A stretch of DNA of 64,000 bases, taken from IMG/VR virus record IMGVR_UViG_3300042391_000634, positions 1-64,000 of that record. The stretch is one strand, 5' to 3'. The position numbers and the translations under genes were made by a program. Position 1 is the first letter of the stretch. Each line of letters opens with the position of its first letter. Under the pieces are notes generated by a model. It did not search any database. It saw only the letters and a list, made by a program, of their open reading frames with translations, and was not told where the DNA came from. This document shows, in pieces, positions 3 to 18,923 of the stretch.

Positions 3-269
3 CGTTATATAACTTGGACAGGAACAACATATACCCCAACATGGGTTGTAAATCCGAGTTATATAACGTATACTCAACCTAATTATACGATTACAACCAC
101 ACCTGGTACAGGAACTTATACAATACCTTACAACGGTACAATTAATACTGCGACAGGTTTTAGTTTAACAACATCAAATACAAACGGAACAACATATACA
201 ACAACAGGAACACTTAATACTTTAACAACGGGAACCGCATTATATTCAAGTAGTAGTTTTAAATTATGA
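3..269 (+). CDS. 3' end of a Thr/Gly/Tyr-rich low-complexity protein (start lies outside the window)
   Basis: Frame 3 is open from base 3: RYITWTGTTYTPTWVVNPSYITYTQPNY...TGTALYSSSSFKL, ending TGA at 267-269, which overlaps the next ATG (ATGA). Missing from the ORF track. Confidence 0.7.
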   Translation, partial: RYITWTGTTYTPTWVVNPSYITYTQPNYTITTTPGTGTYTIPYNGTINTATGFSLTTSNTNGTTYTTTGTLNTLTTGTALYSSSSFKL

Positions 270-1099: not shown

Positions 1100-1706
1100 A
1101 GGGGATGCAATTGTTTGCATGATTTTAGATAATTTAGATTCCAATGGGATTTATGGTAATATATCAATATACAATAATTTGTCATTACCCATATTAAGAG
1201 AAATAAATCATCCCGATTTTAATTTAGATATTCGTGAAGAAATTGATATTAAACAATTTAAGAAATATGTTTTAGGTGTTTATGACCCTAAACATAAAAT
1301 TAAAATTATTGAAAAATTAAATCCTGAAATAGAAAAATTTCATACTCTATTATTTAATGATTTAATTATATCTAAAACATCTAAAATAGGTGATGGTTGT
1401 TTAATTCACGCCAATGTATCTATCGGGGCACACACTAATATTGAAAATTTTGTTTCAATAAATAGAAATGTTTCAATTGGTCACCATACTAATATTGGAA
1501 ATTTTGTTTCAATAAATCCTGGTTGTAATATTGCGGGTAATGTTAATATAGGTGAAGGGACATTAATTGGTATGGGAACAAATGTTTTAAACACAGTACA
1601 AATTGGTAAAAATACAATAATTGGTGCCGGTTCAAATGTAACAAGAGACATACCAGACAATGTAGTTGCTTATGGTAATCCATGTAAAATAATAAGAAAT
1701 AATTAA
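1071..1706 (+). CDS. Sugar O/N-acetyltransferase, hexapeptide-repeat (PglD/NeuD-like)
   Basis: Left-handed beta-helix hexapeptide repeats (IGDGCLI, IGHHTNIG, IGEGTLIG, IGAGSNV) and the C-terminal VTRDIPDNVVAYGNPCKII. Confidence 0.9.
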   Translation: METDIVILGKGDAIVCMILDNLDSNGIYGNISIYNNLSLPILREINHPDFNLDIREEIDIKQFKKYVLGVYDPKHKIKIIEKLNPEIEKFHTLLFNDLIISKTSKIGDGCLIHANVSIGAHTNIENFVSINRNVSIGHHTNIGNFVSINPGCNIAGNVNIGEGTLIGMGTNVLNTVQIGKNTIIGAGSNVTRDIPDNVVAYGNPCKIIRNN

Positions 1707-1707
1707 T

Positions 1708-2352
1708 ATGGCACAAGGGGCACATAAAATAACTGAGGACTTTGAAAACTTACTATGTGATTATACAGGATCACCTTATGCAATTGCTTTAGATAATATG
1801 AGTAATGCGTTGTTCTTATCATTATACTATGAAAAGAATATAAAGAAGAGTTTAACCACAACACATATTGATTGTCCATCTAACACATACCCATCGGTTC
1901 CTTGTGAAATTATTCATAATGGTTTTAAAGTAAATTTTATTCAATCAAACAGTGATAAAATAAAAGGACCATATACATTATATCCATCAAATGTAATTGA
2001 TTCCGCATTAAGATTCACGGCCGATATGTTCCAAAATGGAACACATATGTGTGTATCATTTACTGGCCCATATAAAACATTAAAATTAAGTAAAGGTGGT
2101 GCAATATTAACCGATGATTTTGATGCGATGATGTGGTTTAAACGAGCAAGATTTAGTGGTAGAAGAGAATGTTCATATCACGAAGATAATTTTGATATGT
2201 TGGGGTGGAACTTTTATATGATGCCAGAACTTGCTGCTAGAGGTATTTTAATGATGAGTCAATTCTATAATATAGACGGGACTAAAAAACATATTGAAGA
2301 TTTGGAATTAAGATATCCTGATTTATCTAAGTACGAAATATATAAACAATAA
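1708..2352 (+). CDS. DegT/DnrJ/EryC1/StrS-family PLP aminotransferase (short form, 214 aa)
   Basis: FE..L..YTG..YAIA, IDSA, SF...K.L.L..GGAILTDD, G.NFYM.E..AA.G. Shorter than typical family members. Confidence 0.8.
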   Translation: MAQGAHKITEDFENLLCDYTGSPYAIALDNMSNALFLSLYYEKNIKKSLTTTHIDCPSNTYPSVPCEIIHNGFKVNFIQSNSDKIKGPYTLYPSNVIDSALRFTADMFQNGTHMCVSFTGPYKTLKLSKGGAILTDDFDAMMWFKRARFSGRRECSYHEDNFDMLGWNFYMMPELAARGILMMSQFYNIDGTKKHIEDLELRYPDLSKYEIYKQ

Positions 2353-3311
2353 TGAACGATTTAATTTTTATTACAGCATATTGTGAAACTCAAAAACAAG
2401 AAGAGGTTTTAGAACGTTGTGTTAATTCTGTCATAAAATGTGGATACCACATTGCTTTATTATCACATTCACACATATCATTACACATTCAAAAAAAATG
2501 TCAATATTATATGTATGATTATAATAATGACATTTCTAAAGATTATAATTTATTTGGATACACGACATTTCAAATTAATAATAAACAAATACAATCCAGA
2601 TTTTTTAACAAAACATTTTATGGTTTTGCAATATATAGAATGGTCACAATGGCTTGTCAAATTGCAATAAACTTTGGTTACAAAAACATCCATCATATTG
2701 AGTACGATTGTGAATTATTAAACTCAAATTTAATAATTGAAAATAGTAAATTATTAGAAGAATACGATTCGGTGATTTATACCGATAATGGAGATGAAAA
2801 TGGATTTTTATTTGGATCGTTTAAATCTTTTAAAGTTAGTTCATTACCTGAAAAATATAAAAATTACGATAGAGATTTTATCGATAGTGAGATGAGAAAA
2901 CTAAATAAAACGTATTTGGAATATCTAACTAAAAAATTATTTATTGAATCAGGTAATGTGTTATTTAAGAAAGAACCAACAAACGAGGAGTTTAAAAGAG
3001 GTGATTATTTTAATCATAGAAATTTACATTTTACATTATATTATAATCCAGAAGATAAAACTTTAAATATTTTTTACAATGCTTTAGATTTAGGAAAGTC
3101 GGAGGAAATTACCGTAATAATAAATAAAGAAAAAATAGTTAAAATAATAACAAAACCTGCATTTTGGACCACAAGAATTTTAGGTTTATTTAATGAAATA
3201 ATACACGTTAGGGTGGACAATAATAGTAAAATTATTTACGAAATATCTTTTGATAATAAGTTCAGAGAAATTTTTAAAAACAAATCTTATATTTTAAATA
3301 ATGAAAAGTAA
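2352..3311 (+). CDS. Hypothetical protein, possibly glycosyltransferase-like
   Basis: 319 aa, coupled to the sugar genes; contains the acidic motif HHIEYDCEL. Confidence 0.45.
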   Translation: MNDLIFITAYCETQKQEEVLERCVNSVIKCGYHIALLSHSHISLHIQKKCQYYMYDYNNDISKDYNLFGYTTFQINNKQIQSRFFNKTFYGFAIYRMVTMACQIAINFGYKNIHHIEYDCELLNSNLIIENSKLLEEYDSVIYTDNGDENGFLFGSFKSFKVSSLPEKYKNYDRDFIDSEMRKLNKTYLEYLTKKLFIESGNVLFKKEPTNEEFKRGDYFNHRNLHFTLYYNPEDKTLNIFYNALDLGKSEEITVIINKEKIVKIITKPAFWTTRILGLFNEIIHVRVDNNSKIIYEISFDNKFREIFKNKSYILNNEK

Positions 3312-3768
3312 ATTTAACTTTTTCAGGGGGTATGTTGGAACATTAGATATAATGGATGGACAAACATATGCAACAGCATCGTTATATAACCCACATACAC
3401 TTACAAATGACGAAAGAATAGCACAAATCAATAGACGTCTTCAAATAGACGAAGAAATGTGTAATCAAGAAATCATAACTCATGAACAATATATGAGAAA
3501 TAGAGACATGTTAATTGAACAAGAAAGAATAAGAAGATTAGGAATGATAAATCATTCAAGGGAAACCGATAACCAAATTAGATTGTTTCAAGCAACAACA
3601 ACTGTAACCGTAAATCCAACACTATGGACTAAGGTTAAGATATTTGGAACAAGAGTTAAATTGGTTTTAATTGAAACTTGGAAGTTGGAACCTATCGGTG
3701 TTGTGGTGATGACACTGTTAGTGTCAGTTGTTACATTCATAGGTGTAATGAAATTATTCGGAGCATGA
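3301..3768 (+). CDS. FKF-leader protein (MKSKFNFFRG) with C-terminal TM helix
   Basis: ORF track; shared leader; hydrophobic IGVVVMTLLVSVVTFIGVM. Confidence 0.7.
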   Translation: MKSKFNFFRGYVGTLDIMDGQTYATASLYNPHTLTNDERIAQINRRLQIDEEMCNQEIITHEQYMRNRDMLIEQERIRRLGMINHSRETDNQIRLFQATTTVTVNPTLWTKVKIFGTRVKLVLIETWKLEPIGVVVMTLLVSVVTFIGVMKLFGA

Positions 3769-4037
3769 TAAAACCATTCAAATTTTTAACAAAATATGAA
3801 CATCATCGTTTTACTCCTTATTGTTGTTATGATAATGCAAAATTTATTATTGAAACTTTAATATCTACAGATGAATGGGAGACAACCATATTCCCAAAAG
3901 AATACCCACACGAAAATGGTGTATGGAGAGTTCTTTACATACAACGTGGAAGGAATAATTATCATTCCGTTGTTTGTCATGAACCAATAAATCCAGGATA
4001 CATAATTGAAAGATTTATAGTTAATATAGATTTATGA
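3765..4037 (+). CDS. FKF-leader small protein (MIKPFKFLTK)
   Basis: Start reassigned to the ATG at 3765 (ATGA overlap with the upstream stop). Confidence 0.7.
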   Translation: MIKPFKFLTKYEHHRFTPYCCYDNAKFIIETLISTDEWETTIFPKEYPHENGVWRVLYIQRGRNNYHSVVCHEPINPGYIIERFIVNIDL

Positions 4038-4357
4038 TTAGTAGATTCAAATTTTTGACGGATAATGATGAGGATGAAATTCCTGAAGGTTATATCAATT
4101 TAGAGAATGAAAACATTGCAACTTGGATTTGGGAAAGTTTAACACCACCATCAGACACATTATATTATATAGTTTCGGCAGATACTAATGGTATTATTGA
4201 ATTTTTAAGAATGTTTCCGTCAGAGATGATAGTCCCTGTGTGTTCCATTGTTGGTCCAAATGGTGTGGTTCATAACGGTGGAAACGAAGGAAATGGATGG
4301 GGATTTAATATTCAAACCGACCCAATTCACATAACATATTTAAGTTATAACCCATAA
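4034..4357 (+). CDS. FKF-leader small protein (MISRFKFLT)
   Basis: ORF track; ATGA overlap. Confidence 0.7.
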   Translation: MISRFKFLTDNDEDEIPEGYINLENENIATWIWESLTPPSDTLYYIVSADTNGIIEFLRMFPSEMIVPVCSIVGPNGVVHNGGNEGNGWGFNIQTDPIHITYLSYNP

Positions 4358-4514: not shown

Positions 4515-5357
4515 ATGAGCGGATTAACAACAATTAAATTAAGTAGTGAAGATTTAAAGAAGGAACAAGAACGCCAAAGGAAACGAGGTAAATTGATACT
4601 TAAACAACTAAAAAAAGGTAAGGTTAAGGTTGTTGTTGGTCTATATGATGAAGATGGAACGGTTCCCGATATTATATTTCAATATCAAATACATGATGCG
4701 GAAGTTAAATCAATTGTTGATTATGCCAATGGAGATGTAAATTGTTTAATTATTTGTTTTTATGATGACATTGATATTTTTAACGAAGATGGTAGTGAAA
4801 TAACAGAAAAATTACCTCTTTGGTTAGTTTCAGAAATTGAGAACAAACTTGAAAAAAAGTTTGAACAATTCAATATTGAACTTAGATTTAACCAACAATC
4901 AGGCGGAGGGAAGAAACATATAGTTAATGAAGAAGTGAATGACGACGACCAAAGACTAATTAACAAAACTAGAGTTATTTATAAATTACTCAAAAAAGGT
5001 GGTAAAATGGGGTTCGACTCTGCACCATATTACCACGAAGTACATTGGACATTACCCAATAAATTTTACGTTAAAATTAAACATCATGATAAAAAGGATG
5101 CTGAACGTTATCAATTAAAAGTTGATAGTTATCCTATTTTATTGTTGAACACTGAAACTATAAATTACACCAAAACCAATGATAAACCATTGAGAAATGG
5201 TGAAAAACATTTAATTGCAGGTGAGATTACAACTCAATTTAAAAAATATGGAATAACTGTTTATTGGGGAGGAGAAGTTCCAAAATATTCTATTTTTAGT
5301 CCAAGATCAATATCTCCCGATGAAACGTATACTGAAGTAGACATCACTCCAAAATAA
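4515..5357 (+). CDS. Two-copy KALKKG-domain protein, putative head-internal protein
   Basis: TATTTATA at 4503-4510; repeats KLILKQLKKG and KTRVIYKLLKKG joined by an IVNEE linker. Confidence 0.65.
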   Translation: MSGLTTIKLSSEDLKKEQERQRKRGKLILKQLKKGKVKVVVGLYDEDGTVPDIIFQYQIHDAEVKSIVDYANGDVNCLIICFYDDIDIFNEDGSEITEKLPLWLVSEIENKLEKKFEQFNIELRFNQQSGGGKKHIVNEEVNDDDQRLINKTRVIYKLLKKGGKMGFDSAPYYHEVHWTLPNKFYVKIKHHDKKDAERYQLKVDSYPILLLNTETINYTKTNDKPLRNGEKHLIAGEITTQFKKYGITVYWGGEVPKYSIFSPRSISPDETYTEVDITPK

Positions 5358-5585: not shown

Positions 5586-5909
5586 ATGAATAGAAAGGAG
5601 TATAGGAGACTATTACAGGACCCCAAATGGAAGATAAAGGCTTCCTTCATAAGAAAGAGAGATAACCACACCTGCGTCAGATGTGGGAAGAAATCAAATA
5701 GATTACAGGTTCACCATACCAAATACGAAGATGGTCTAATGCCTTGGGAGTATGATAATGATACTTTGGAGTCATTATGTTCTGGTTGTCACAAAAAAGA
5801 ACATAATATTAAACCTAAGAGAAAGTTTACACCAAGGAAGAAGAAAGAACCTAAATTACAAACAAGGGTTATTAAGATTAAACCGTTTGTTGATTCTCTT
5901 GTTCCCTAA
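5586..5909 (+). CDS. HNH endonuclease
   Basis: RDNHTCVRCGK...LQVHHTKY...LESLCSGCHKKEH; preceded by TATTTATA at 5574. Confidence 0.85.
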   Translation: MNRKEYRRLLQDPKWKIKASFIRKRDNHTCVRCGKKSNRLQVHHTKYEDGLMPWEYDNDTLESLCSGCHKKEHNIKPKRKFTPRKKKEPKLQTRVIKIKPFVDSLVP

Positions 5910-6146: not shown

Positions 6147-7499
6147 TTAATTAACGACAATTTCATTTATAGTTATTGTTCCATCTAAATTACCATTTAA
6201 CGCAAGGAAGGTTAGTTTATTATTAACCTTAAATACTTTTACATAAGCCGGTGTAATTTTAGGAATATCTAAACCTTTATTATAATCCCCCATAACACCA
6301 TTATTATTCTTCCAAAATAATTTATTAATGTTAAGTGAATTTCCAGTTTTTAAAAGTTTACCGGCCCATCCATGTAATATAATATCAGGATAACCATCCT
6401 TATCAAAATCGATAATATCAAATTCTCTGAATTGTAATTGGTCAAATGTATAATCTAATCTATTATTAGAAGGTGTAAAGTTTCCTTTACCGTCACTATA
6501 CCAAATTTCAATACCATTGTAATTTGTTCCCTCTGTTGCAATTGCCAAATCAATATTACCATCTTTATTAAAATCGGCGGCTTTAATTGATGTTGAACCT
6601 CTATCGTCTGTTTTAAATATACCAAGAGGACCTGGATCCTTATCTAATTTATATTTCCCAAGAGTTGAGTTATATGAAAAAATACTAACACTATATCTAT
6701 CGTTTGGTTTTTGAAATGTAGGATTAAAACCATAATCTCCTCTAACAATTTCAGGACGAGAATCTCCATATAAATCTTGAATTAAAACTGCACCGCCGGC
6801 TTTTCCACCATAGAAATCTGAAGGGTCAAATATGTTATTGTTTTCGGTAAATGAACCATTACTATTTTGTGTATATGAATGAAGACCAAGATAATTATTA
6901 CCTTTTGTTCCCATGTGTAACCCTATAACATCAATTAAACCATCATTATTAATATCACCTGAAGATACCGAATGATAAAAACTATTAACGGTTGATATGT
7001 TTGAAAATGAAACTTTACTCCCTTCTGTTTTCATTAAAATTAAATTACCAAATGGCCATGGTTGACCATTTAATTCAGGACCAGAATCTGAAAATACCCA
7101 ACTTTGTTTTGTGGTATCAATACAAGTGTAGTTTCTACCACAACCCATAGAAGCCTCAGGATAACTATTTTCATAAGACCAATTATTATTTGTTTTTGTT
7201 AAATGTAAAGTTGGTATTAATGGATATGTATAAAATAATGTTGCAGGTATAATCAAATGTTCAATGTTATCTTTTTGATATAAAATAACACCAGGTATTG
7301 CCAAATTAACACCTTTAGCCACTATGTCGTTTGTAAAGTTTGGAACATTAAAACCAGATATTACTGTGGTTGTTAATGTATAAGGTGAAGTAGGTGGGAT
7401 CACAACTACAGGAGGTTCAATAACTACAGGGGGGACTACAGATTCCTTCTTACAAGATATTATTAATAAAAATAATATAAAATATAGAGTTTTTTTCAT
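6147..7499 (-). CDS. Lipoprotein with FG-GAP/VCBS-like repeats
   Basis: Lipobox LLIISC followed by KKES; repeats GDINNDGLIDVI, DLYGDSRPEIV, ADFNKDGNIDLAI, IDFDKDGYPDII. Confidence 0.8.
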   Translation of the reverse strand: MKKTLYFILFLLIISCKKESVVPPVVIEPPVVVIPPTSPYTLTTTVISGFNVPNFTNDIVAKGVNLAIPGVILYQKDNIEHLIIPATLFYTYPLIPTLHLTKTNNNWSYENSYPEASMGCGRNYTCIDTTKQSWVFSDSGPELNGQPWPFGNLILMKTEGSKVSFSNISTVNSFYHSVSSGDINNDGLIDVIGLHMGTKGNNYLGLHSYTQNSNGSFTENNNIFDPSDFYGGKAGGAVLIQDLYGDSRPEIVRGDYGFNPTFQKPNDRYSVSIFSYNSTLGKYKLDKDPGPLGIFKTDDRGSTSIKAADFNKDGNIDLAIATEGTNYNGIEIWYSDGKGNFTPSNNRLDYTFDQLQFREFDIIDFDKDGYPDIILHGWAGKLLKTGNSLNINKLFWKNNNGVMGDYNKGLDIPKITPAYVKVFKVNNKLTFLALNGNLDGTITINEIVVN

Positions 7500-8123: not shown

Positions 8124-9044
8124 ATGAGTTACATTTTAATTTACATAATAGGATTTATCTTAACACTAACATTCTTAAAGTTATATGGTAAGAAAATGGA
8201 GATTGATTATGATCCACCACATGATGAGGATTATGATGACTATAAAAATAATGCTGAGGCCTATCTATTCTTTTCATTGAGTTGGTTTGTAACAGCACCA
8301 ATGTTTATTGTTGTTGCAACAATTCAGTTGTTATATAAATTCACCCAATGGTTTATGAAATACCCAAACGTATAATATGACACTATTTTTAATTTATTGG
8401 ATACTAACAACAATATACGGAGTATATTGGTTGGTTAAACACCCATCATCAAGACATGGAGATGACAATGATGAATTTACATTATTGGAAGTTATTGCTA
8501 AAATTTTTCCAGCTGGTTTAATAGCTTGGGCAATTGTTCCAATGTTATTATTACATCAGGTTAAATTCAAAAGATAATGACCGACGCACAAATAGTAATA
8601 TCAGTAATTTTTGCTGTGATATTTTTCGTAATTCTTATTTTTAATGTGGTATCATACCCAAACGTGGAGTTATATAAAAAGAAATATGATGAATTGAAAC
8701 GTGGAGTGTATAAGTATGAACCAGATTATGGTGAATCACATTATTTTTATCTATACAGTTACGATATTCATACTCTAACATTTACTCGCACAGATGTTGA
8801 TATCATATTCTTTCTTGATGGTGATATAAAACTATCACATAACTTATACATACACAAAAGTCATTTGTTTATGTCATTAGTTAGTTGGTATTATTGGAGA
8901 AAGTTTCAAAAGTTAAAAGATGAATTGATTAACCAACATAATTTTAATGAGGCATATGCAAGATATAGATTAGGTTATTTGGAATCGTTACAAGAACAAC
9001 CTAAGAAACAAAACAAACTTACCTTCAAATTTTTTAGAGGATGA
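8124..9044 (+). CDS. Three small membrane proteins (8124-8375, 8377-8577, 8577-9044); the last ends in LTFKFFRG
   Basis: ORF track; hydrophobic N-terminal helices; tight gene spacing. Confidence 0.65.
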
Positions 9045-10541
9045 TAATACCATTTAAATTTTTTGTGGGGAAGGTTTATACCGATGAATTTGAATTTCCA
9101 AGAGTAAGGAGATCTCCAGAACATATAGGTAGAGGATATATTCAAACAATCTTACCGACCGAACCATATCTTGCAACACTACCAGAACCCAACTACGATG
9201 GATTTGTTATCAGTCGTGTAAGAACTAAAATGAGACGAAATATAAATTGGAGAGGATATGAAACTTCTATACAAGAAAGAAATGGTGAGGTAATAATATT
9301 AAAGATTGTAAGTGGTATAAACATTGGTGGAATGTTTCACATAGTTTATTTAATTACAAGAGACGGGAATACTGAAAATTATAGAGTAAGTGTCCCATTA
9401 GTCAATTTACAAAGAAGAGGATAATATGGCAAAAGCAAGAAAGATTTTATCAAACACTATAAGTGAATTGTTAAAAGAAACATCGTTGGAAACAAGAATT
9501 AAAATGTCATGTTGGTTTATGATTAACAATCTTATTCATGAATCAGGCGCAAGAGAAGAATCTGCGTGGGACGAAACAAATCCAAGAGATATTGAGATGA
9601 TGAAACTATTGGACGATAAAACAAAAGAACTAACGGAAACAATATTAAGAAACATTAAAGAATGGGAAGAAGATGGTAAACCAATTTAAATTTTTTGAGG
9701 GGAGACCAAAAAGATTATATCACTACGACCTATTGGTTGGGGGTATGCCTGTTGAGGTAATAACTTCAAACGAACCACCAACACATTTTTTTTCTGGTCC
9801 CACACAACATCATAGTTTTTATGTGGGAGTTCAAAATACACAATTAGAATTAATTTATGATGGCGATATGGATGAATTATCCGTTAGAGCAATGGTAGAT
9901 GAATTAAAATATAGATATATAAATTATATATCAATTAATGAACAGGTAATTGGATTTATGGAAGATTTTTTAAATGAACATTTAGATGGAACATCAACAA
10001 TAAGATACATATGATAAAACCTTTTAAACTACTTAATGGATACACATATATAAATGAGTTGCATGAACCATATATTCCGTTGCAGATAACACATGCACCA
10101 CCATTTGGTATATCACATCGTCATTGGAATATGTTGCCACGGGATTTGAGAGGTGGAACCCTAATACATATGGAAATATACATTGAGGGGTGGGAAGCTG
10201 GTCGCAATAATATCACCATCAATCCATATGAAGGTATCATCAATGACCCTGTGGTTACTGAATGGATTGAGTTGTGGAATAGAGGACATTTGAGGTGGTC
10301 TGGTAGAACAGGAATGAATTATGTTAATGTAAATCCCGACCCACCAATAGATGAAAGATATCCGGAATTCTATAACACAGATGAATTAATATTCTTTGAT
10401 GTAACGGAAGAAAGATTAGGTATGCTTGACGGTGAACCATATAAAGTTATGTTGTTCAGACATATTGAAGAGGGAAATACAATAGAAGGAGATACAATAT
10501 ATCCCGAACATCCAATGTATAATTTTCCTGATATAATTTAA
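9041..10541 (+). CDS. Small ORFs 9041-9424, 9426-9689, 9673-10014 and 10011-10541; three have FKF leaders and 10011 has an RMF-like motif
   Basis: Leaders MIIPFKFF, MVNQFKFF, MIKPFKLL; YIEGWEAGRNNITINPY...WIELWNRG in 10011. Confidence 0.65.
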
Positions 10542-11467
10542 AAAACAAAATAATATGAGATTAAACGTAGAATTACTTGCAATTGATTTTTACAGAGTAG
10601 GAAGAAGTTGGATTTCTATTTTAGAAATCAATTATGGTCACCCATTATTTTATATAGAATGGGGACAAGGTATGAAAATACAAATCAGTTTTTTATTTGG
10701 ACTAATTAAAAATTATTAATATGAAATTTGAAGAAGCGGAAGAAAAATCATTAACTGTAAAATGGGAAATAAGAACTTGCTCGCAAGGAGAAAAATGTTG
10801 GTGTAGAACAATCAAACCTATTGAACCCATACTTTTTGATGACGGGGGTCAAGATGAATATTGGATAGTTGGGTCTGGTGAGTTACATAAAAATATTGCA
10901 GAGTATTTTGTTGAACTCCATAATAAAAATATTGAAAATAAAATTAAATAATATGAAATTCAGAAAAACACTCACAGATAAACGTCTTGAAGAATTGTCT
11001 GATAAGGTAAGAAGAGGAACCCCAATCTTAATGAGTGAGGCGATTGAGGTAGTGGAATATCAAGAGATGTTAAAGAAGAATAAACTACCTTTCACAGATA
11101 GAATGCTTAATTTCTTTAAAATAAAAAAATAATATGAATATCATTTCAAACCCAAGCGATTTATTAAAACACTTATCCTTCTGGCATAACAAAACAGATG
11201 ACGAGTGTATTGAAATGGCAACAGGTGAATTTGGCGTTGATGCTGAACGAGCATTAATTAATATACTTGAAAGAGATTTCTGCACCAATATTAATAATAA
11301 TGTAATTGAAAAATTAAAAACATTATGACACCAAGAGAAAGAAAATATCACATAAACAAACGTCTTCGTAAATTACTTTGGGAAGAAATAACAAGAGTAA
11401 TTGATGAGGACATTGAAAATCAATTAAATGGTGGCAAACCTAATCTAGACATTCAACCAATGACAAT

Positions 11468-14400
11468 ATGAAAACATTTAAGTTCCTCTCAAAGAAACAA
11501 ATACAAGTTCCTATACCCAATAGATATAGTAGTTTAAGTCCTGAGGATAGAAACATATACACAAAAGGATATTATGATGCATTTGATTGTTATAATCATA
11601 GTCGTTCGTTAGAATCACCATACAATCCACTTGTGGAAGAATATGAGTATGAATTATGGAGAGAGGGAGTTACGATGTATGAACGAAATAATAATGCATA
11701 ATGATTAAGGACTTCAAATTTTTTCAAGGTAAAAAAGAAAGAATAAATTGGCAACTAACCGGTTTATTAGATGATGCAACAAATGTTCCATTATTGATTG
11801 GTGTATTGGACATCACATACAAATATATTCAGGATAATAATTTAATAGATAATAATAGGGTTAATAATATATTGATTATTGTTATGACCAAATTATACAG
11901 AGACAAATATAATTCTTATAGTGATTATGATATTAGACGTAAGATTGATGAGGTTGCGGTTCATACCAATAGTGTAACAATAAGAAGATACATACAAGAA
12001 CTTGAAGAGGGTGCTTGGATGAGTATTGATGTTGAAGCGGAGATTAATCATATTATTTATGAAAAATGTAAATGGGAAGAACATGACTATGGATTTTAAA
12101 TTTTTTAAAGGGACACCTCCACCTAAATGGAGAACATACGGTGGATTGATGCATCCATTGGAAACCATAAGCACAAATTATATCAAACGAATAATGAAAC
12201 TTTTGGTAACTAATGGTACATTGCCTAATCAAAAAGATGGGAGAACGGCAACCGAGTGGTATATTATATTAGATAATGAATTAAAAAGAAGAAATGATTA
12301 AACCATTTAAATTCTTTTCAGGGATAAAAATACAATATATTCTAATAATCACCAAGGATACCGATACAACGTACAGCATCCCATTAGATATGTATGGACA
12401 TATAATGGAAGTTGCGGTGGGTTTACACAGGGAGAATATGATATTATTTTCACCAGTAGAGTATAGAGTAGAAAACGAAATTGGTGAGGGAGTAACTTAT
12501 TTCTATATGATAAATAATATTGTACCATATTTTAATATAACTAATAGAATAATGATAGAATATAGTGTAAAGTTTCCTGATACAGAATATTATTGTGATT
12601 TTACCACTCAAGAAAATATATCCTTATATGAAACCATTTAAGTTCTTCCAAAATAATATAAAAAGAAAATGGTATTTAAGGAGTGACCACCTCGGTCAAA
12701 TACAATGGATGTATAGACCTGTGGGGGTAATATTCTATATGGAAAATAGATGGGATGGAAATTTTTATACAGAGGAGATGAAGACAATGACGGTGACGGC
12801 TACAAGTAGATATATGTACTCATACAATCAGTTTATGGAAATGAATAGGGATAATATTATATTTGCATATGAATTCGTGGACAATGCAGATATAAGTAAT
12901 ATGATACATTATAACGAAGATAATTTTGATGATATGCCAAGGGATAGACGACTAATATTTAGAGGAGTAATAAGAAATAATGAAACCATTTAAGTTCTTC
13001 CAAAAAGAAGATTATTTTCTTTCAATAGCAAGAAGAGGTGCGGGGAGAACCATCGCTCAAGACCTTGTGCCGGTTCAACCATTGGGCTCACCTGATAATG
13101 ACCTTCATATTCTTAGGAATTCACTATACGGTGCACTGCGTACAAGAGAATGTGCGGTAATTGCATCATCCATCCGAAATTTTAATAATTGGAGAAATGA
13201 AACATTTGACAGAAGTAGTGTTTTCATTATAACCAATAGAGATTTCACACATACTAATGGAAATAACAATCAAACCACAAGATACAGGGCAATAACGCGA
13301 ATTGATGATTGTTATGGACTAATGTTCGATGATTATATTTTAACGGATAGAATCCACGATATATTATCAAGCGGATATAATGAAACTATAGACCATATTC
13401 ACCAACTAGTTGATGAGGTTAACCTACACACAAGAAACAATGAAACCATTTAAATTTTTTAGAACCCCTTTTAACCCAAGACAATACGATCTTGATTCAT
13501 TTACATTCATCGGTGTTAGTCCCATTAAAACTCATGAAGATGTTCAAGGAAGGTATAGAACAATGATTTTTATGAATAATGATACACGTCTACCACTCAC
13601 TGGAAATTTAATACACGAACACGAGGAAGCATTCCATATGGCGGACATAATTGAAATAAGGGGAAATCAAATATTCCAATTACCAAGACAAGAGGCGGAA
13701 TATATAAACGTAACATTAACATTCACACCAAATGAAACCATTTAAGTTCCTAACCAAACCAAATACAATCAATTACGAAGGTGAGTGGTCACGACATGTT
13801 ATTGGAATAGTTTATGATTATATTAACAATAGATATAGAGACACATATATATCAGAAACATTTGATGCTAAATATATTATTACCGAAACAACATATGAAC
13901 TCGGACAATTATCACGTGCTGTTGTTAAAGTATATCCTAATAGAGATACTAACATGATAATAACATATTGGGTAACCGTGGTAAACACATTTGCATTCAT
14001 AACACAACATAATGTTGAACACTATGCGACCATTTAAATTCCTAAACGATAATAAGAAAGATGATTTTCTTATCCCAACGATGGATGAAATTGCTAACGC
14101 ATTAATTGTTGGAAGAGAAGCATATCTAAATGGACATCCGGTAGAATATAATCCTTTTTTAAGACAACAAACATTTGACGCATTTGACGAGGGATGGGAA
14201 TTAGAACATTCATATGATATATTAAGAGACGCACAACAAAGAGCAAACAATGGACTTTAAATTCTTTCAAAAACCAAAACCAATACAACCACCAGGTAAT
14301 ATGTATCTGATGTTTAATATGGATGATGCTCTAATCAATGTGATAAGATGGTTACAATATCATAATTGGGAAATATTAAATAGTGAAACATATATGTCTC

Positions 14401-15511
14401 AGGTGAATGTACCAATCAATAATTGTTTTATAAGGATAACGAGTTGGAGAAGACATATTAATCCACCAATAAGAGTTCAAATAAAATATAGTGTGTTTGA
14501 AGCAAACACATTTTCAAGAAATTTCACATTTATTATGAATGAAGAAGAATTTTTAAGAAGAATAGATATAACAGGAATATGATAAAAGAGTTTAAATTTT
14601 TAAGTAATAACAAATCAATAGGAACTAATACTATTCCATATCCTGATGATTTAGTATGTCCTTTAATGAGAGAGGTATATAAGGCTGGTTATTTATGTGC
14701 AATGGTGGGAAATCAGATAAGTGATAATCGTTACGCAAATACACAATATGCTTATATGTGGAATAGAGGTTGGATTGATTACCAAATGCAAACTGTAAAT
14801 GAGAGAGTTTAAGTTCCTAAGAAATCCTTTATTAGTTACCATTGATGGGAAATCAATCTATCCGGGGACATTATTCTATAGTATGAATAAGATATGTATA
14901 ATATTACCAAGGAAGATAACACCCAAATATACAATAGTAACAAGATGTATCCATCCAATTTATAAGGATGTATTCAAACCTGATTACGATACATTAATGT
15001 ATTTCAGCACAAAAGAATCTGCCGAGTTCTATAAGAGTAGATTAATACATTGGGATGAACACGTTATTGGTGGTGAGGTATTCCATAACAACGCTGACAT
15101 AACATTAACATTTAGAAGATGATAAGACAATTTAAATTTTTATCGGGAGTGAAATCCATGTTGGATATGTATGGTAGAGAAATCAACTCAAATAACTATA
15201 GAACCATCAGTATAACCGGCAATATTCGTTTTCTAAAAGAATACCATAGAAGATTGGATTGTATTTATATTTCACATTATAATATGTTTAATGAATATCA
15301 TCCATTATTTAATGAATCGGTAGATTTATATAATAGAACGGTTGGATTTATAGAAGGAGGTCACATAACAACCCACGAAGAGATAAGGAGATTTGTTCAT
15401 AGCGCCTATTCAGATATGGTATATGGGATATTTGACCAGTATGAAATAGGTGGGGCAACAAATCAGGAGATATTAGTTGATACATATAACTTTATAAACC
15501 CAAGACGATGA
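11468..15511 (+). CDS. Tandem operon of 13 FKF-leader ORFs (starts 11468, 11701, 12089, 12294, 12628, 12980, 13440, 13732, 14024, 14250, 14579, 14799, 15119)
   Basis: Each begins M-x(1-3)-FKF(F/L). After the first two genes, each start overlaps the upstream stop by 4-14 nt. Several starts were reassigned from the ORF track. Confidence 0.8.
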
Positions 15512-15549
15512 TAAAGATTTTAAATACCTGAAGATGATATTTATATAGG

Positions 15550-16395
15550 ATGAAATTAATGGATATATTATTAGAGGATTGGGAAGATGATTACCGAAAT
15601 GTATCTCATAAGCTTAAACTTATGTATAAATTACTTAGAGTAGGGTCGGTTAAAATTAGTAAATTAATACCTGATTTTGAGACACCATTTTGGACAGGAT
15701 TTGATTGGATTGAAGATGGTGATGCATTGATAACATATGAACTACCAAGCGAATATCATTTAATACCTGGTAGTATAACTAGCATATATAGAATAGTAAT
15801 AAGAGGTATAACTATTAATTGTGAAAAATATCCAGCGTTAGCTGATGACATAGATATTAGGGAAGATTTATTAAGATATATTTTACGTAGAATTGAAAAT
15901 TATCTAATACCTACACTCCAAGAGGGAGACGAAATTGAGTTTAGTATAAGAAAAAAACATGAAGAGAATATTATGTTTAAGAATGTCGTAAATGAAAGTG
16001 TTGTTGATGATAAAGAAAATGATTATGATACCGTTGTTAAAAAGGCACCAACAATTTTCAAAGCACTCAAGAAAGGTAAGATAACAATGGAGGTTGATGC
16101 AATAAGATTATTTTATCGAGGTGCAACGGACCCACAAAAATACACATTTGATTATGATTTAGGAGATGTATACATTGTTGAAACAGATCCATTTGAAAAT
16201 AACTACAATGTTAAAGTTTTAATACCGGCAATTAAAATTAACTGTGACGAAAACCCAAATTTAAATAATATTCAAACAATTAAAATGGACATTCTTAATA
16301 TTGTTAAGAAAAAATTTAACAACTTTGGATTGAACATTATTCTTAGAGCAACAAAATTTCGTTTAAAACATAATGGAAAGTGGATTATACCTTAA
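15550..16395 (+). CDS. CTS-like leader (MKLMDILLED) plus two KALKKG domains
   Basis: TATTTATA at 15538; KLKLMYKLLRVG and KKAPTIFKALKKG joined by a VVNES linker. Confidence 0.7.
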   Translation: MKLMDILLEDWEDDYRNVSHKLKLMYKLLRVGSVKISKLIPDFETPFWTGFDWIEDGDALITYELPSEYHLIPGSITSIYRIVIRGITINCEKYPALADDIDIREDLLRYILRRIENYLIPTLQEGDEIEFSIRKKHEENIMFKNVVNESVVDDKENDYDTVVKKAPTIFKALKKGKITMEVDAIRLFYRGATDPQKYTFDYDLGDVYIVETDPFENNYNVKVLIPAIKINCDENPNLNNIQTIKMDILNIVKKKFNNFGLNIILRATKFRLKHNGKWIIP

Positions 16396-16639
16396 TATAT
16401 AAATCCTCAGGTTTAGGTGGTTTTATTTCAAACACAACTGGTCTTTTCTTTTCCCATTTCTCTAAAATCTGTTGAGCCAAGGACACCATAGCCCTTTCAT
16501 AGTATTCCTCACCATATATTGGGACGATTATACTTTTATACATGTCTAATGTATCTGAAATGTTGAGACTATCAACTTTCTTTTTAACCGTGATGGTTTC
16601 ACTAAAATACTTATACGATAATGAGATTGGTATATTCAT
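16385..16639 (-). CDS. Hypothetical protein
   Basis: 84-aa ORF; upstream TATATTTG on the minus strand near 16644-16651. Confidence 0.55.
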   Translation of the reverse strand: MNIPISLSYKYFSETITVKKKVDSLNISDTLDMYKSIIVPIYGEEYYERAMVSLAQQILEKWEKKRPVVFEIKPPKPEDLYIKV

Positions 16640-16651
16640 TCCACAAATATA

Positions 16652-16690
16652 CTAGAATATTCTAGAATATCACAAATAAAGTTATCCACA
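16652..16690. promoter_or_regulatory. Palindrome CTAGAATATTCTAG plus perfect DnaA box TTATCCACA in a divergent intergenic region
   Basis: Palindrome at 16652-16665; DnaA box at 16682-16690. Confidence 0.55.
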
Positions 16691-16739
16691 TTTAAAATCG
16701 TGTTTTTAAATCTCGAATATTTTTATTATATTTAATGAT

Positions 16740-17162
16740 ATGTTGTCTAAATTTAGATTTTTCAGGGGTATAGTTAGTGCAAGGATTGTCAGTATTGATG
16801 GTGCTTTAGAAAGACTAACAAGGACACCTGTTAGTCATATTCCAATACCCGATACTCTTACAACCTTAGTAGAGATACAACAATTTAGGGCAGGATGGAG
16901 ATCGTGTGAGTTTGGAAGAAACATATACGATAATCCATATAGTAATAGAGAAGCTCTAATATATTCATTACATAGAGCATGGGAATATGGATTTACTGAA
17001 TGTTTTAATAATAGAAGAGTTAATAGAGATGAAGAGGTTTATTTAGAAGGATGGGCGACAGCTCAATTAGGGTTACCATTAAATGAAAACCCACACACAT
17101 ATGGTTCAAACCAATTTAATATGTGGTATATAGGATGGAATGACTTTGTTGATAATCATTAA
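16740..17162 (+). CDS. FKF-leader protein with two RMF/CrpP-like repeats
   Basis: FRAGWRSCEFGRNIYDNPY...AWEYGF and YLEGWATAQLGLPLNENPH...MWYIGW. Confidence 0.6.
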   Translation: MLSKFRFFRGIVSARIVSIDGALERLTRTPVSHIPIPDTLTTLVEIQQFRAGWRSCEFGRNIYDNPYSNREALIYSLHRAWEYGFTECFNNRRVNRDEEVYLEGWATAQLGLPLNENPHTYGSNQFNMWYIGWNDFVDNH

Positions 17163-17166
17163 AAAT

Positions 17167-17493
17167 ATGCGAGACTTCAAATTTCTTACCAAGAACGATA
17201 CAATAAACTTTCATGGACAAATGTCCATTGAAGCGCTCGGATATTTTGATGATTACGTTAATCGTATAATTAGATATGAAATCACAACAACAACCGCAAC
17301 ATATAAGATAGCAGATTACACTTATGGTGAAGGTAACGTTGTGGCGGGAACCGTCAACGCATATCCATTAGATGCTCCCAATATCATGGTCACCTACACT
17401 ATAAGGGGTGGAGAGATTACATCACATACAATACATATAGATTATTGGAATACGATGGGGCAATTGATAAATACAATAAGACGAGAGGATTAG
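17167..17493 (+). CDS. FKF-leader protein (MRDFKFLT), paralog of 13732-14037
   Basis: Aligns by eye: FKFLTK..TIN..G......G...DY.N... Confidence 0.65.
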   Translation: MRDFKFLTKNDTINFHGQMSIEALGYFDDYVNRIIRYEITTTTATYKIADYTYGEGNVVAGTVNAYPLDAPNIMVTYTIRGGEITSHTIHIDYWNTMGQLINTIRRED

Positions 17494-17545: not shown

Positions 17546-18229
17546 ATGAAAATACAAGCATTATTCATCAGTGATGTCCACTTAGGTTCTAAAGGTTCAA
17601 ATGCAGAACAAGTCTTAGATTTACTCAAACAATATCAACCCGAATATCTATTCTTAGTTGGTGATATAATAGATGGATGGTTACTTAAACGTAGGTTCCG
17701 TTGGCCTCAATCACATACAAATGTATTAAGAAAGATAATGTCATATTCAAAGAACGGAACCAAAGTAATTTATATACCAGGAAATCACGATGAGTTCTTA
17801 AGAGAGTATGGTGAGTTTTCTTTCGGCAATATAGAAATACACAATGAATATGTATGGAATAATACTTTTATTACACACGGAGATTTATATGATGGTGTGG
17901 TTAAACTTAAATGGTTGGGTATCTTAGGGTCAATAGGTTATGATATGGCAATAACAATAGATAGAAAATTAAAGAAATTGGGAATGAAACGTTCTTTATC
18001 TAAGTTCTTAAAAGATAAGGTAAAGGAAGCTGTTAAATTCATTACACAATTTGAGGTGGAGTTAACCAGACAAGCAAAGAAACATCACTGTACATCCGTT
18101 ATATGTGGTCATATTCATCATCCTGAGGATAGAGATATTGATGGAATAAGATATTTAAATTGTGGGGATTGGATTGAGAACAATAGTTATATCATATACA
18201 ACAACAATGAATACACAGTCATTAAGTAA
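17546..18229 (+). CDS. Metallophosphoesterase, LpxH/PlcP-like (UDP-2,3-diacylglucosamine hydrolase family)
   Basis: FISDVHLG, LVGDIIDGW, YIPGNHDE, HGDLYD, VICGHIH, YLNCGDW. Confidence 0.88.
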   Translation: MKIQALFISDVHLGSKGSNAEQVLDLLKQYQPEYLFLVGDIIDGWLLKRRFRWPQSHTNVLRKIMSYSKNGTKVIYIPGNHDEFLREYGEFSFGNIEIHNEYVWNNTFITHGDLYDGVVKLKWLGILGSIGYDMAITIDRKLKKLGMKRSLSKFLKDKVKEAVKFITQFEVELTRQAKKHHCTSVICGHIHHPEDRDIDGIRYLNCGDWIENNSYIIYNNNEYTVIK

Positions 18230-18923
18230 TCAATTAACAATAGTCATTCCATCAAAGAATGAAAATAGAACGTTATATGATTGTATCTATAACATATCTA
18301 AACAAACCAACATTGCAGGGATAAAGATAATAATAGCAGATGTATCAGATGAAGAAGAATCTATATGGTATTTATGGAAATTACAATCGGACTTTAAATA
18401 TTCATTAAACATAGAGGTAATAGAAGGGGGATATCCATCTCAGGGAAGACTTAACGGATCAAAACTTGTAACAACCCCATATATGTTATTCTTGGATGCA
18501 GATATATTCTTAACCAATAAGGATATAATCGTGGAGTGTATGAAATATAAGAAGGACTTAATTACGGTCCCGTTTTATACGGATAAACCATACAGATGGG
18601 TATTCAGATTATTTGATATGTTCCAATCAATATCCTCGTTATTGGGAACTCCATTTGCTGTAGGAGGATTTCAGTTATGGAACACAAAGACGTATTGGGA
18701 AATAGGAGGATACAATCCAGAGGAGTTATTCGCAGAGGACTATTCGTTATCAAAGATGGTTATGTCAAAGAACTTTAAGGTGGTTAATATAAAAGGAACA
18801 TACACATCACCAAGACGATTTAAATCTAAGGGTGTATTATGGATGTTCAATATAATGATTAAATCTTATCTCAATAGAAACAACCCATCCTTTTTTAAAC
18901 AGACCCACAACTATTGGACATAA
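18207..18923 (+). CDS. Glycosyltransferase family 2
   Basis: TIVIPSKNE, IIIAD, LFLDAD, GGYNPEELFAED. Confidence 0.85.
   Translation: MNTQSLSNQLTIVIPSKNENRTLYDCIYNISKQTNIAGIKIIIADVSDEEESIWYLWKLQSDFKYSLNIEVIEGGYPSQGRLNGSKLVTTPYMLFLDADIFLTNKDIIVECMKYKKDLITVPFYTDKPYRWVFRLFDMFQSISSLLGTPFAVGGFQLWNTKTYWEIGGYNPEELFAEDYSLSKMVMSKNFKVVNIKGTYTSPRRFKSKGVLWMFNIMIKSYLNRNNPSFFKQTHNYWT

What the first reader, a model, noticed from the sequence alone, without database searches (positions are those of the whole stretch)
10011..17162. Expanded RMF/CrpP-like domain family behind FKF leaders
Seen: the motif (Y/F)xxG(W/Y)xA...G....NPY...W..GW recurs in 10011, 11468 (YTKGYYDA...SPYNP...LWREG), 14024 (GREAYLNG..VEYNPF...FDEGW), 14579 (YKAGYLCAMVG...NRY...MWNRGW) and twice in 16740. 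Known: ribosome modulation factor has the pattern AxxxGYxAGxxGRSxxxCPY...WLGGW and drives 100S ribosome hibernation in gammaproteobacteria. Inference: six diverged copies could modulate host ribosomes or be a reused small scaffold.
Basis: partly seen in the sequence, partly recalled or inferred. Interest (0 to 1): 0.68.

Follow-up and report, generated by a model that had tools for sequence, protein, structure and literature searches.

The report
RMF-fold phage proteins behind shared tag
A T4-like giant phage carries a row of about 20 small genes that all start with the same seven-residue tag, and five of them are built on the two-helix fold of the bacterial ribosome modulation factor but lack its rRNA-binding residues, so they are probably a reused scaffold and not hibernation factors.

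Summary
The window is the first 64 kb of a 335,630-bp T4-like jumbo phage record. About 20 overlapping small + strand ORFs at 3.3-17.5 kb start with M-x(0-3)-F-K-F-[F/L]. Five of them carry six copies of the G[WY]..A...NP[YF]...W..GW motif.

Five copies (10011, 14024, 14579 and two in 16740) form one family:
- Profile-profile comparison links it to canonical RMF (P 1.5e-6).
- The fold of the 14579 protein matches RMF best: top Foldseek PDB hit, VIA Z 5.9 over 51 of 53 residues, and top viral hit a phage "ribosome modulation factor".
- The 11468 copy is not supported beyond the motif.

The ribosome-hibernation reading is weak. The five basic residues with which RMF grips 16S rRNA are not conserved. 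The proteins are acidic to neutral (RMF has pI 10-11). The host looks like a Bacteroidota, not a gammaproteobacterium.

RMF-fold small proteins turn out to be common in phages, and some orthologues are already auto-named RMF.

The more unusual feature is the tag. It precedes at least 42 unrelated protein bodies in this phage clade. It resembles the capsid-targeting sequence of T4 internal proteins (T4 IPI starts MKTFKEF). That suggests a large set of capsid-delivered accessory proteins, but this is inference only.

The parts
10011..10541 (+). FKL-leader protein A (176 aa). Order: leader, 'GISHRHWNMLPRDLR' linker, RMF-like domain (about 10167-10307), then a C-terminal domain ending PDII.
   Evidence: ORF. 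Subfamily profile linked to the second 16740 domain, P 1.8e-11. The C-terminal domain occurs alone behind a leader in L005, and the RMF-like part occurs without it in L006 and L009.
11468..11701 (+). FKF-leader protein B (77 aa, starts MKTFKFL). It has the motif by eye only, so it is a tentative member.
   Evidence: No significant profile link. Model pLDDT 46.8 with two helices. Four near-identical orthologues.
14024..14260 (+). FKF-leader protein C (78 aa, net charge -6) with an RMF-like domain at about 14099-14215.
   Evidence: Pfam RMF E 0.19. Subfamily against the first 16740 domain P 5e-5, and against canonical RMF P 1.1e-3. About ten orthologues are named 'ribosome modulation factor' by JGI.
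14579..14812 (+). FKF-leader protein D (77 aa) with an RMF-like domain at about 14666-14791. This is the protein that was modelled.
   Evidence: Pfam RMF E 0.02. AlphaFold2 pLDDT 78, with 84-93 over residues 21-70; helices 28-42 and 58-76; leader disordered. RMF is the best structural match.
16740..17162 (+). FRF-leader protein E (140 aa) with two RMF-like domains in tandem (16872-17012 and 17028-17156).
   Evidence: Domain 1 against domain 2 P 7e-7. About 30 clusters of 135-163 aa orthologues in metagenomes, some carrying precomputed PF04957. Absent from the syntenic array of L018.
3301..4357 (+). First block of leader-bearing cassettes (3301 with FNF, 3765, 4034).
9041..15511 (+). Main block of the leader cassette array. 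It holds 16 FKF-type ORFs, most overlapping the next by 4, 8, 11 or 14 nt.
   Evidence: Of the 20 junctions between listed leader ORFs, 15 are overlaps. In 14 of these the upstream stop lies inside the next leader (TGA of ATGA, or TAA of TTTAAR).
17167..17493 (+). Last leader cassette of the window. It is a paralogue of the 13732 protein.
12980..13453 (+). FKF-leader protein that holds a fragment like the N-terminal part of the T4-type major capsid protein.
   Evidence: Pfam Gp23 positions 8-89: E 0.0011 in the protein scan and 2.3e-4, 18.5 bits, below the cut-off, in the genome scan.

Best explanation
These are phage accessory proteins that reuse the RMF/CrpP-type two-helix hairpin as a small, fast-evolving binding scaffold. 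They are not canonical ribosome hibernation factors.

Shown:
- The conserved residues (G-W/Y, NP-Y/F, W..G-W) are the same ones that canonical RMF conserves. That they are the structural core of the hairpin is inference.
- The basic surface with which RMF grips 16S rRNA is gone, and what remains is mostly acidic.
- The domain occurs singly, in tandem, and fused to other cassette bodies.
- Each protein hangs behind a disordered N-terminal tag, M-x(0-3)-F-K-F-[F/L]. The same tag heads at least 42 unrelated protein bodies in a tightly overlapping cassette array of a T4-like jumbo phage clade.
- Selection on the tag acts at the peptide level, because third codon positions vary.

Inferred:
- The tag is an address that delivers all these proteins to one common partner.
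- My preferred identity for it (about 0.35-0.4) is a counterpart of the capsid-targeting sequence (CTS) of T4 internal proteins. The array would then be a large set of proteins packed into the head and delivered with the DNA, or at least made together, to deal with host functions or defences.
- The array probably changes by gain, loss and fusion of cassettes at the leader junctions.
For: Homology and fold:
-. The chain runs canonical RMF to the 'CPY' subfamily (P 2e-6), to the second 16740 domain (2e-5), to the 10011, 14579 and first 16740 domains.
- The merged family against RMF gives P 1.5e-6.
- Structure. In BFVD the top hit is 'Ribosome modulation factor [Caulobacter phage CcrBL9]' at rmsd 0.9, followed by dozens of small phage proteins.

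Loss of the RMF surface:
-, read against bioRxiv 10.1101/382572.

Modularity:
-. P0178, P0197 and P0217 fuse the domain to the body of the 9673 protein.

Tag:
-. Of the 119 metagenomic homologues listed, 100 carry it.
- It is disordered in the model.

T4-like context:
- gp23, gp21, a scaffold-like gene and a portal are present.
- T4 IPI starts MKTFKEF, and IPII and IPIII start MKTYQEFIAE.
- Targeting depends on CTS residues 4 and 7 (PMC9026906). These are F4 and F/L7 in MKPFKFF.

Cassette gain and loss between G000 and L018 falls at cassette boundaries.
Against: - No protein in the window reaches Pfam's RMF threshold (best 15.4 against 27.9 bits).
- The structural scores are not significant on their own for a 50-residue helical hairpin.
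- Nothing here shows what the domain binds.

Against the CTS reading:
- There is no enrichment of the T4 protease site [LI]xE after the leader (24% against 29% in shuffles).
- The distance from the Met to FKF varies by 0-4 residues.
- Most of these proteins are not basic, unlike the T4 internal proteins.
- No TATAAATA late-promoter motif lies on the + strand inside the main array.
- T4's own hypothetical gp61.1 also starts MKTFKEF.
- The nearest cultured relatives, Flavobacterium phage immuto and Rhodothermus phage RM378, have no recurrent N-terminal motif.
Confidence: 0.55

Rival explanations
1. They are true ribosome modulators. The RMF-like hairpin still docks on the host 30S subunit near the anti-Shine-Dalgarno end or S1/S7/S21, through a different and less basic surface. 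It would shut off or re-programme host translation, and the tandem protein might bridge two ribosomes.
For: Homology and fold shared with RMF. RMF also makes protein contacts with S1 and S7. The genome shows almost no Shine-Dalgarno use (2.4% of long ORFs), so the host's anti-SD region is an unusual place that a phage might exploit. A tandem architecture exists.
Against: The five rRNA-contact residues and R37 are not conserved. Net charge is -14 to +1. The N-terminal extension of RMF that intertwines with S7 is replaced by the tag and a linker. RMF is described as a gammaproteobacterial factor (abstracts), while this phage's capsid is closest to phages of Flavobacterium, Rhodothermus and Microcystis. 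RMF-fold proteins occur in phages of hosts described as lacking RMF.
Confidence: 0.15
2. The proteins are ordinary cytoplasmic early proteins, for example anti-defence or takeover factors, and the tag has nothing to do with the capsid. It could be an N-terminal degron, a docking motif for another hub protein, or a start region selected for translation (re)initiation in a host without Shine-Dalgarno pairing.
For: The polycistronic array is tightly coupled, with stops inside the next leader. There is no processing site and no late-promoter motif. The codons after the ATG are A/U-rich. Upstream regions are A-rich and lack SD. From my own knowledge, not tested: the tag has a Met-basic-hydrophobic pattern like the N-terminal ClpX recognition motifs.
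Against: Third-position variation with F-K-F-[FL] kept argues for a peptide signal and not a pure RNA signal. None of the 209 large ORFs uses this start. The resemblance to T4 IPI in a phage with a T4-type head would then be coincidence.
Confidence: 0.28
3. The motif is a chance pattern in AT-rich small ORFs that are not real genes.
Against: There are 204 homologues in metagenomes at E <= 0.01, with conserved frames and lengths. Orthologues sit in at least ten related jumbo phage contigs. The model is confident and the profile links are significant.
Confidence: 0.02

Closest known systems
Ribosome modulation factor RMF (Pfam PF04957; E. coli b0953; PDB 4V8G, 9IOT, 2JRM)
   Same: Two-helix hairpin of about 45 residues. 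Same register of G-[YW]-x-A-G, (C/N)-P-Y and W-x-x-G-W. Profile-profile P 1.5e-6. Best structural match.
   Different: No N-terminal basic stretch, and none of R3, K5, R8, R11, R15 is conserved. Acidic to neutral instead of pI 10-11. Below the Pfam threshold. Carries an N-terminal tag and linker. Occurs in tandem and in fusions. Encoded by a phage whose host is probably a Bacteroidota.
RMF-like small proteins of other phages (for example 'Ribosome modulation factor' of Caulobacter phage CcrBL9 and Delftia phage IME-DE1, and many uncharacterised BFVD entries)
   Same: Same predicted fold at rmsd 0.9-2.4 over 40-52 residues. More than one copy per genome also occurs there (two entries each for CcrBL9 and CcrSC).
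   Different: Their sequences were not at hand, so nothing could be checked there about a shared N-terminal tag or a cassette array. No sequence match to GenBank phages. To my knowledge none has a tested function.
CrpP / Rmf-CrpP fold proteins of Pseudomonas plasmids and ICEs
   Same: From my own knowledge only: small RMF-like proteins carried by mobile elements, with a doubtful function.
   Different: Not compared here, because no CrpP sequence was obtained from a tool. NCBIfam gave no RMF or CrpP hit for the five proteins.
T4 internal proteins IPI, IPII, IPIII and their capsid-targeting sequence
   Same: Unrelated small proteins share only a short N-terminal peptide, in a phage with gp20/gp21/gp22-like/gp23 head genes. 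MKTFKEF (IPI) against MKTFKFL or MKPFKFF. The aromatic residues at positions 4 and 7 are the T4 targeting determinants.
   Different: About 20 genes per genome instead of three. No [LI]xE processing site. Variable offset from the Met. Mostly not basic. Packaging is untested.
PeSL-type mobile cassettes of the hyperplastic regions of T4-type phages (my own knowledge: Arbiol et al. 2010)
   Same: Small accessory ORFs are shuffled between related phages at short conserved junction sequences.
   Different: Here the conserved junction is the first 20 nt of each coding sequence and is kept at the peptide level. It is not a promoter and stem-loop between genes.

Membership tests
RMF (PF04957), family membership | Score above Pfam's gathering threshold (27.9 bits) | tested here: not met
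   Best 15.4 bits (14579), 12.2 (14024), 9.3 (16740), and none for 10011 and 11468. A related 'CPY' subfamily in other phages does carry precomputed PF04957 hits.
RMF (PF04957), family membership | Distant homology to canonical RMF by profile-profile comparison | tested here: met
   hhalign of the merged phage family against 16 RMFs: probability 90%, P 1.5e-6, 43 columns. A4 against A2: P 9.8e-5. The phage HMM scores RMFs at about 12 bits, P 6e-6.
RMF (PF04957), family membership | Two-helix hairpin fold superposable on solved RMF | tested here: met
   Foldseek top PDB hit 9iot_y, TM 0.72, rmsd 1.4. VIA 4v8g_AV Z 5.9, rmsd 2.5, 51 of 53 residues, rank 2 of 48,161. These scores are not significant on their own.
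RMF, function as hibernation factor | Conserved basic residues R3, K5, R8, R11, R15 that bind the 16S rRNA backbone | tested here: not met
   At the equivalent offsets the six copies keep 0-2 basic residues, and never the same ones. Residues defined in bioRxiv 10.1101/382572.
RMF, function as hibernation factor | Strongly basic protein (pI about 10-11) | tested here: not met
   Canonical RMF has net charge +6 to +8. The window's five proteins have pI 4.6-7.7 and net charge -14 to +1. Their RMF-like domains have pI 4.1-7.9, and up to 9.2 in orthologues from related contigs.
RMF, function as hibernation factor | Binds 30S and drives 100S formation | not testable with these tools
   Needs sucrose gradients or cryo-EM.
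CrpP family | Sequence or profile match to CrpP | not tested
   No CrpP sequence was obtained. NCBIfam gave no relevant hit.
T4-type internal proteins with capsid-targeting sequence | Phage has the T4-type prohead machinery (gp20 portal, gp21 protease, gp22-like scaffold, gp23) | tested here: met
   PF07068 211 bits at 124971-126746. PF03420 72.5 bits at 122913-123596. Acidic 420-aa ORF between them. Portal-sized ORF at 119593-121422.
T4-type internal proteins with capsid-targeting sequence | Short N-terminal peptide shared by otherwise unrelated proteins, with aromatic residues at positions 4 and 7 | tested here: inconclusive
   Shared by 42 BLAST clusters. MKPFKFF and MKTFKFL match T4 IPI MKTFKEF at five of seven positions. 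The offset from the Met varies, and T4 gp61.1 has the same start.
T4-type internal proteins with capsid-targeting sequence | gp21 processing site [LI]-x-E after the targeting peptide | tested here: not met
   24% of the bodies have the motif in the first 30 residues, against 29% in shuffles.
T4-type internal proteins with capsid-targeting sequence | Protein present in the virion and ejected with the DNA | not testable with these tools
   No cultured relative. The complex prediction with the scaffold gave no answer.

The most novel reading that the evidence does not exclude
An uncultured clade of T4-like jumbo phages, probably of Bacteroidota, uses a derived capsid-targeting tag (M-K-P-F-K-F-F) to load dozens of interchangeable small effector cassettes into its head. 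Among them are RMF-fold proteins and fragments of its own capsid protein. This would extend the three-protein T4 internal-protein system to an arsenal of at least 40 families. Some RMF-fold members might act on ribosomes of a host that does not use Shine-Dalgarno pairing.
Probability: 0.25. Interest if true: 0.8.

Novelty: new variant of a known kind. Interest (0 to 1): 0.55.

Why it matters
RMF-fold mini-proteins are widespread in phages and on mobile elements, yet to my knowledge none has a tested function. Here a single genome offers five genes with six domains, in single, tandem and fused forms. They have clearly lost the rRNA-binding surface. That makes this a good system for asking what the fold is used for outside hibernation.

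The shared N-terminal tag matters more. If it is a capsid-targeting signal, it marks a ready-made catalogue of proteins that a jumbo phage injects. It would also give a portable tag for packaging cargo in a non-E. coli phage. If it is not, it is still an unexplained short linear motif common to at least 42 protein families. It also shows how a cassette array supplies the stop codon of each gene from the start region of the next.

Tried and rejected
- A profile of the six copies against PDB sequences found no RMF, only chance hits at E >= 0.8.
- PHROGs and NCBIfam gave only weak, unrelated hits.
- A word search with the 14579 protein alone found only near-identical sequences.
- The search for related loci with the six-copy alignment failed because no stretch was conserved enough.
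- The megablast DNA search and tblastn against GenBank phages found nothing for the region or for two of the array's proteins, the RMF-like 16740 protein and the 12980 protein.
- The Atlas language-model search gave only leads below 0.9, one of them a cluster with 11% PF04957.
- The model of the 11468 protein was too poor to use.
- Promoter and terminator scans were no better than shuffles. TATAAATA and TAnnTTTG counts were uninformative.
- Complex prediction of the 14024 protein with the scaffold-like protein gave no answer (score 0.00). It is not evidence either way (after five unreachable attempts).
- The strict T4-IPI start pattern was absent from immuto, Mel-JY01, RM378 and LR756508. No recurrent N-terminal motif was found in immuto or RM378.
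- The large representative search was not used, because the word search had answered the question.
It was overwritten by P0016 from file before use.


Full report
**What the window is.** The window is bases 1-64000 of a 335,630-bp IMG/VR virus record that CheckV rates as complete. The record is linear and about 30% G+C.
- It has a T4-type head module outside the window: a portal-sized ORF at 119593-121422, a gp21-type prohead protease at 122913-123596 (PF03420, 72.5 bits), an acidic 420-aa scaffold-like ORF at 123686-124948, and a gp23-type major capsid protein at 124971-126746 (PF07068, 211 bits).
- The nearest capsid proteins in GenBank reach only 35-44% identity. They come from an uncultured 484-kb phage, Microcystis phage Mel-JY01, Flavobacterium phage immuto and Rhodothermus phage RM378.
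- Only 2.4% of the 209 long ORFs have a Shine-Dalgarno-like tetramer upstream, which is fewer than in a control window. The upstream regions are A-rich.
- Two predicted lipoproteins start with an ...IISC lipobox.
- Together these point to a Bacteroidota-like host. This is inference. A direct host search failed.

**The observation.**
- A pattern written after the fact hits only these ORFs in the six-frame translation of the whole genome.
- The 'FKF leader' is real and striking. About 20 + strand ORFs between 3301 and 17493 begin M-x(0-3)-F-K-F-[F/L]. None of the 209 ORFs of 200 aa or more does, and the tetrapeptide is otherwise very rare.

**Are the six copies one family?**
- With this genome alone, leave-one-out HMMs recover the 14579 copy (E 1e-7) and the 16740 copies (E 5e-5), but not those of 10011, 11468 or 14024.
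- I then searched the IMG/VR viral contigs for the leader's DNA pattern. It found 16 contigs, most of which carry similar arrays (several are parts of 234-334 kb records) with orthologues and further variants of the domain.
- A profile word search found 204 metagenomic proteins at E <= 0.01. Of the 119 listed, 100 carry the leader, 14 carry a precomputed PF04957 hit, and about ten, all orthologues of the 14024 protein, are named 'ribosome modulation factor' by JGI.
- Subfamily profiles give these links:

| Pair | hhalign P |
|---|---|
| 10011 to second 16740 domain | 1.8e-11 |
| 14579 to second 16740 domain | 4e-7 |
| first to second 16740 domain | 7e-7 |
| 14024 to first 16740 domain | 5e-5 |
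| 'CPY' subfamily of other phages to second 16740 domain | 2e-5 |
| 'CPY' subfamily to canonical RMF | 2e-6 |

- The 11468 protein is not linked. Its best P is 1.6e-3, and 0.025 against the merged family. Its model is unreliable (pLDDT 46.8). I count it as possible only.

**Is it RMF-like?** Yes, at the level of fold and distant homology.
- Pfam RMF is the only hit for three of the five proteins, but below threshold (E 0.02, 0.19, 1.6).
- The merged phage family against an alignment of 16 canonical RMFs (obtained) gives hhalign probability 90% and P 1.5e-6. It covers 43 columns in the expected register: G-Y/W..A.G, (C/N)PY, W..GW (earlier versions).
- The AlphaFold2 model of the 14579 protein has pLDDT 84-93 over residues 21-70, two helices (28-42 and 58-76), and a disordered leader.
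- Its best Foldseek hit among 350,542 PDB chains is the 54-residue chain y of an E. coli hibernating ribosome (TM 0.72, rmsd 1.4). The Vibrio RMF NMR structure is also listed.
- VIA-align puts RMF bound to the 70S ribosome second of 48,161 chains. It is the only match that covers a whole chain (Z 5.9, rmsd 2.5, 51 of 53 residues).
- In the viral library the top hit is 'Ribosome modulation factor [Caulobacter phage CcrBL9]' at rmsd 0.9. Dozens of small phage proteins follow.
- None of the structural scores is significant alone for so small a helical domain. The agreement of the independent lines is what carries the claim.

**Does it work like RMF?** Probably not.
- In the E. coli 100S structure, RMF holds the 16S rRNA backbone with conserved R3, K5, R8, R11 and R15. 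Its N-terminal extension intertwines with S7, and R37 contacts S1 (bioRxiv 10.1101/382572).
- At the equivalent offsets the six copies keep 0-2 basic residues, never the same ones, and R37 is lost.
- The segment before the hairpin is the tag plus a P-rich linker.
- Canonical RMFs carry net charge +6 to +8 (pI 10-11). The five proteins in the window carry -14 to +1 (pI 4.6-7.7).
- What is conserved is what RMF itself conserves at its core. The family has therefore kept the scaffold and replaced the surface.
- The domain is also modular. It occurs singly (14024, 14579), in tandem (16740), followed by a second domain (10011), and fused to the body of the 9673 protein in other phages. The C-terminal domain of 10011 occurs on its own behind a leader elsewhere.

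**The leader and the array.**
- Across G000 and the related contigs, 112 leader ORFs fall into 42 BLAST clusters, so the tag heads many unrelated bodies.
- The consensus is M-[KRI]-x-F-K-F-[FL]-x-[GKN].
- Codon third positions vary (TTT/TTC, AAA/AAG, and TTT/TTC/CTA/TTA...) while the residues stay the same. Selection is therefore on the peptide.
- Of the 20 junctions between listed leader ORFs, 15 are overlaps. In 14 of these the upstream ORF ends inside the next leader. It ends either at the TGA of ATGA or at the TAA of TTT-AAR, which produces the recurrent ...ETI C-termini. The leader thus stops two of the three incoming frames.
- Compared with the syntenic array of L018, whole cassettes are present or absent. 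The tandem 16740 gene is among those that differ.

**What the tag may be.**
- Read from the T4 record, IPI starts MKTFKEF and IPII and IPIII start MKTYQEFIAE.
- Mutational work places targeting at CTS residues 4 and 7 and processing at residues 8 and 10 (PMC9026906).
- MKPFKFF and MKTFKFL keep M1, K2, F4, K5 and a hydrophobic or aromatic residue at position 7, in a phage with the T4 prohead machinery.
- Two leader proteins even contain pieces of the gp23-type capsid protein: 12980-13453, and G000 302925-303215 on the minus strand (47.7 bits).
- Several results count against the CTS reading:
  - There is no excess of [LI]xE sites after the tag.
  - The offset from the Met varies.
  - Most of these proteins are not basic.
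  - No late-promoter motif lies in the main array.
  - T4 gp61.1, not known as a head protein, has the same start.
  - The cultured relatives lack any such motif.
- I put the CTS reading at 0.35-0.4. Other possibilities are a degron, docking to another hub protein, or a start region shaped for coupled translation without Shine-Dalgarno pairing.

**Verdict.**
- The hibernation function is not supported.
- RMF-fold proteins in phages are not new, and some of these orthologues are already auto-annotated as RMF.
- Three things are new: the expansion and modular use of the domain, the loss of the rRNA-binding surface, and above all the shared tag on a cassette array of at least 42 families in a T4-like jumbo phage clade with no cultured member.
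- I found no paper that mentions the tag.

Noticed in passing
window 12980-13453 (+); G000 302925-303215 (-): Two leader-bearing small proteins contain fragments of the T4-type major capsid protein. They match Pfam Gp23 positions 8-89 (E 2e-4, below cut-off) and 135-194 (47.7 bits, above cut-off). From my own knowledge, the first overlaps the conserved gp23 segment that in T4 holds the Gol peptide sensed by the Lit defence protease. A decoy role is conceivable.
   Followed up: partly
window 9041-15511 (+): In the leader-cassette array, 14 of the 20 junctions have the upstream gene's stop codon supplied by the next gene's leader (ATGA, or TAA inside TTT-AAR). This gives the recurrent C-termini ...NETI, ...YETI and ...YATI, with overlaps of 4, 8, 11 or 14 nt.
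   Followed up: yes
window 8577-9044 (+): This non-leader ORF ends ...KLTFKFFRG, directly before the start of the next leader gene (MIIPFKFF). It looks like a relic leader read in frame, as expected after recombination between leaders.
   Followed up: no
window 15550, 19784, 44070, 46935 (+): A second recurrent N-terminus, M-K-L-[ILM]-D-[IT]-[IL]-x-E, heads four larger proteins of 281-436 aa. The 15550 and 19784 proteins, and also 4515-5357, share internal 'KKGK' repeat modules. The I-x-E at positions 7-9 resembles the T4 prohead-protease site.
   Followed up: no
window 6147-7499 (-) and 51013-52530 (+): Two predicted lipoproteins with the signal MKK...IISC. The first has FG-GAP repeats (PF13517, E 2.7e-14). 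Taken with the near absence of Shine-Dalgarno sequences, they suggest a Bacteroidota host.
   Followed up: partly
T4 NC_000866 18966-19130 (-), locus L029: T4 gene 61.1 (54 aa, hypothetical) begins with the same 21 nt and the same MKTFKEF as internal protein I. I am not aware that it has been tested for encapsidation.
   Followed up: no
proteins P0178, P0197, P0217 (metagenomic); L005 1-264 (-): There are domain fusions between cassettes. The RMF-like domain is fused to the body of the 9673-type protein. The C-terminal domain of the 10011 protein also stands alone behind a leader.
   Followed up: partly
window 16872-17012 and orthologues (P0124-P0161): The first domain of the tandem family keeps a Cys in each helix (...GWRxCE... 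and ...ECY/F...), often followed by H-N-H-P. This could be a disulfide or a metal staple that canonical RMF lacks.
   Followed up: no
window 5586-5909 (+); 22968 (-); G000 275333, 284598, 310283, 330969, 333873: An HNH endonuclease gene sits between the two blocks of the array. The genome also holds six paralogous GDSL/SGNH-type hydrolases, each with an N-terminal FGDS motif.
   Followed up: no
window 266-3311 and 17546-18923; G000 299369-304661: The array is flanked on both sides by sugar-modifying genes: acetyltransferase, aminotransferase-like, glycosyltransferases, an LpxH-like metallophosphoesterase (PF00149, E 7.7e-15) and an epimerase. More leader ORFs lie at 300-323 kb. If the genome is circularly permuted, the two record ends form one plastic region.
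   Followed up: no
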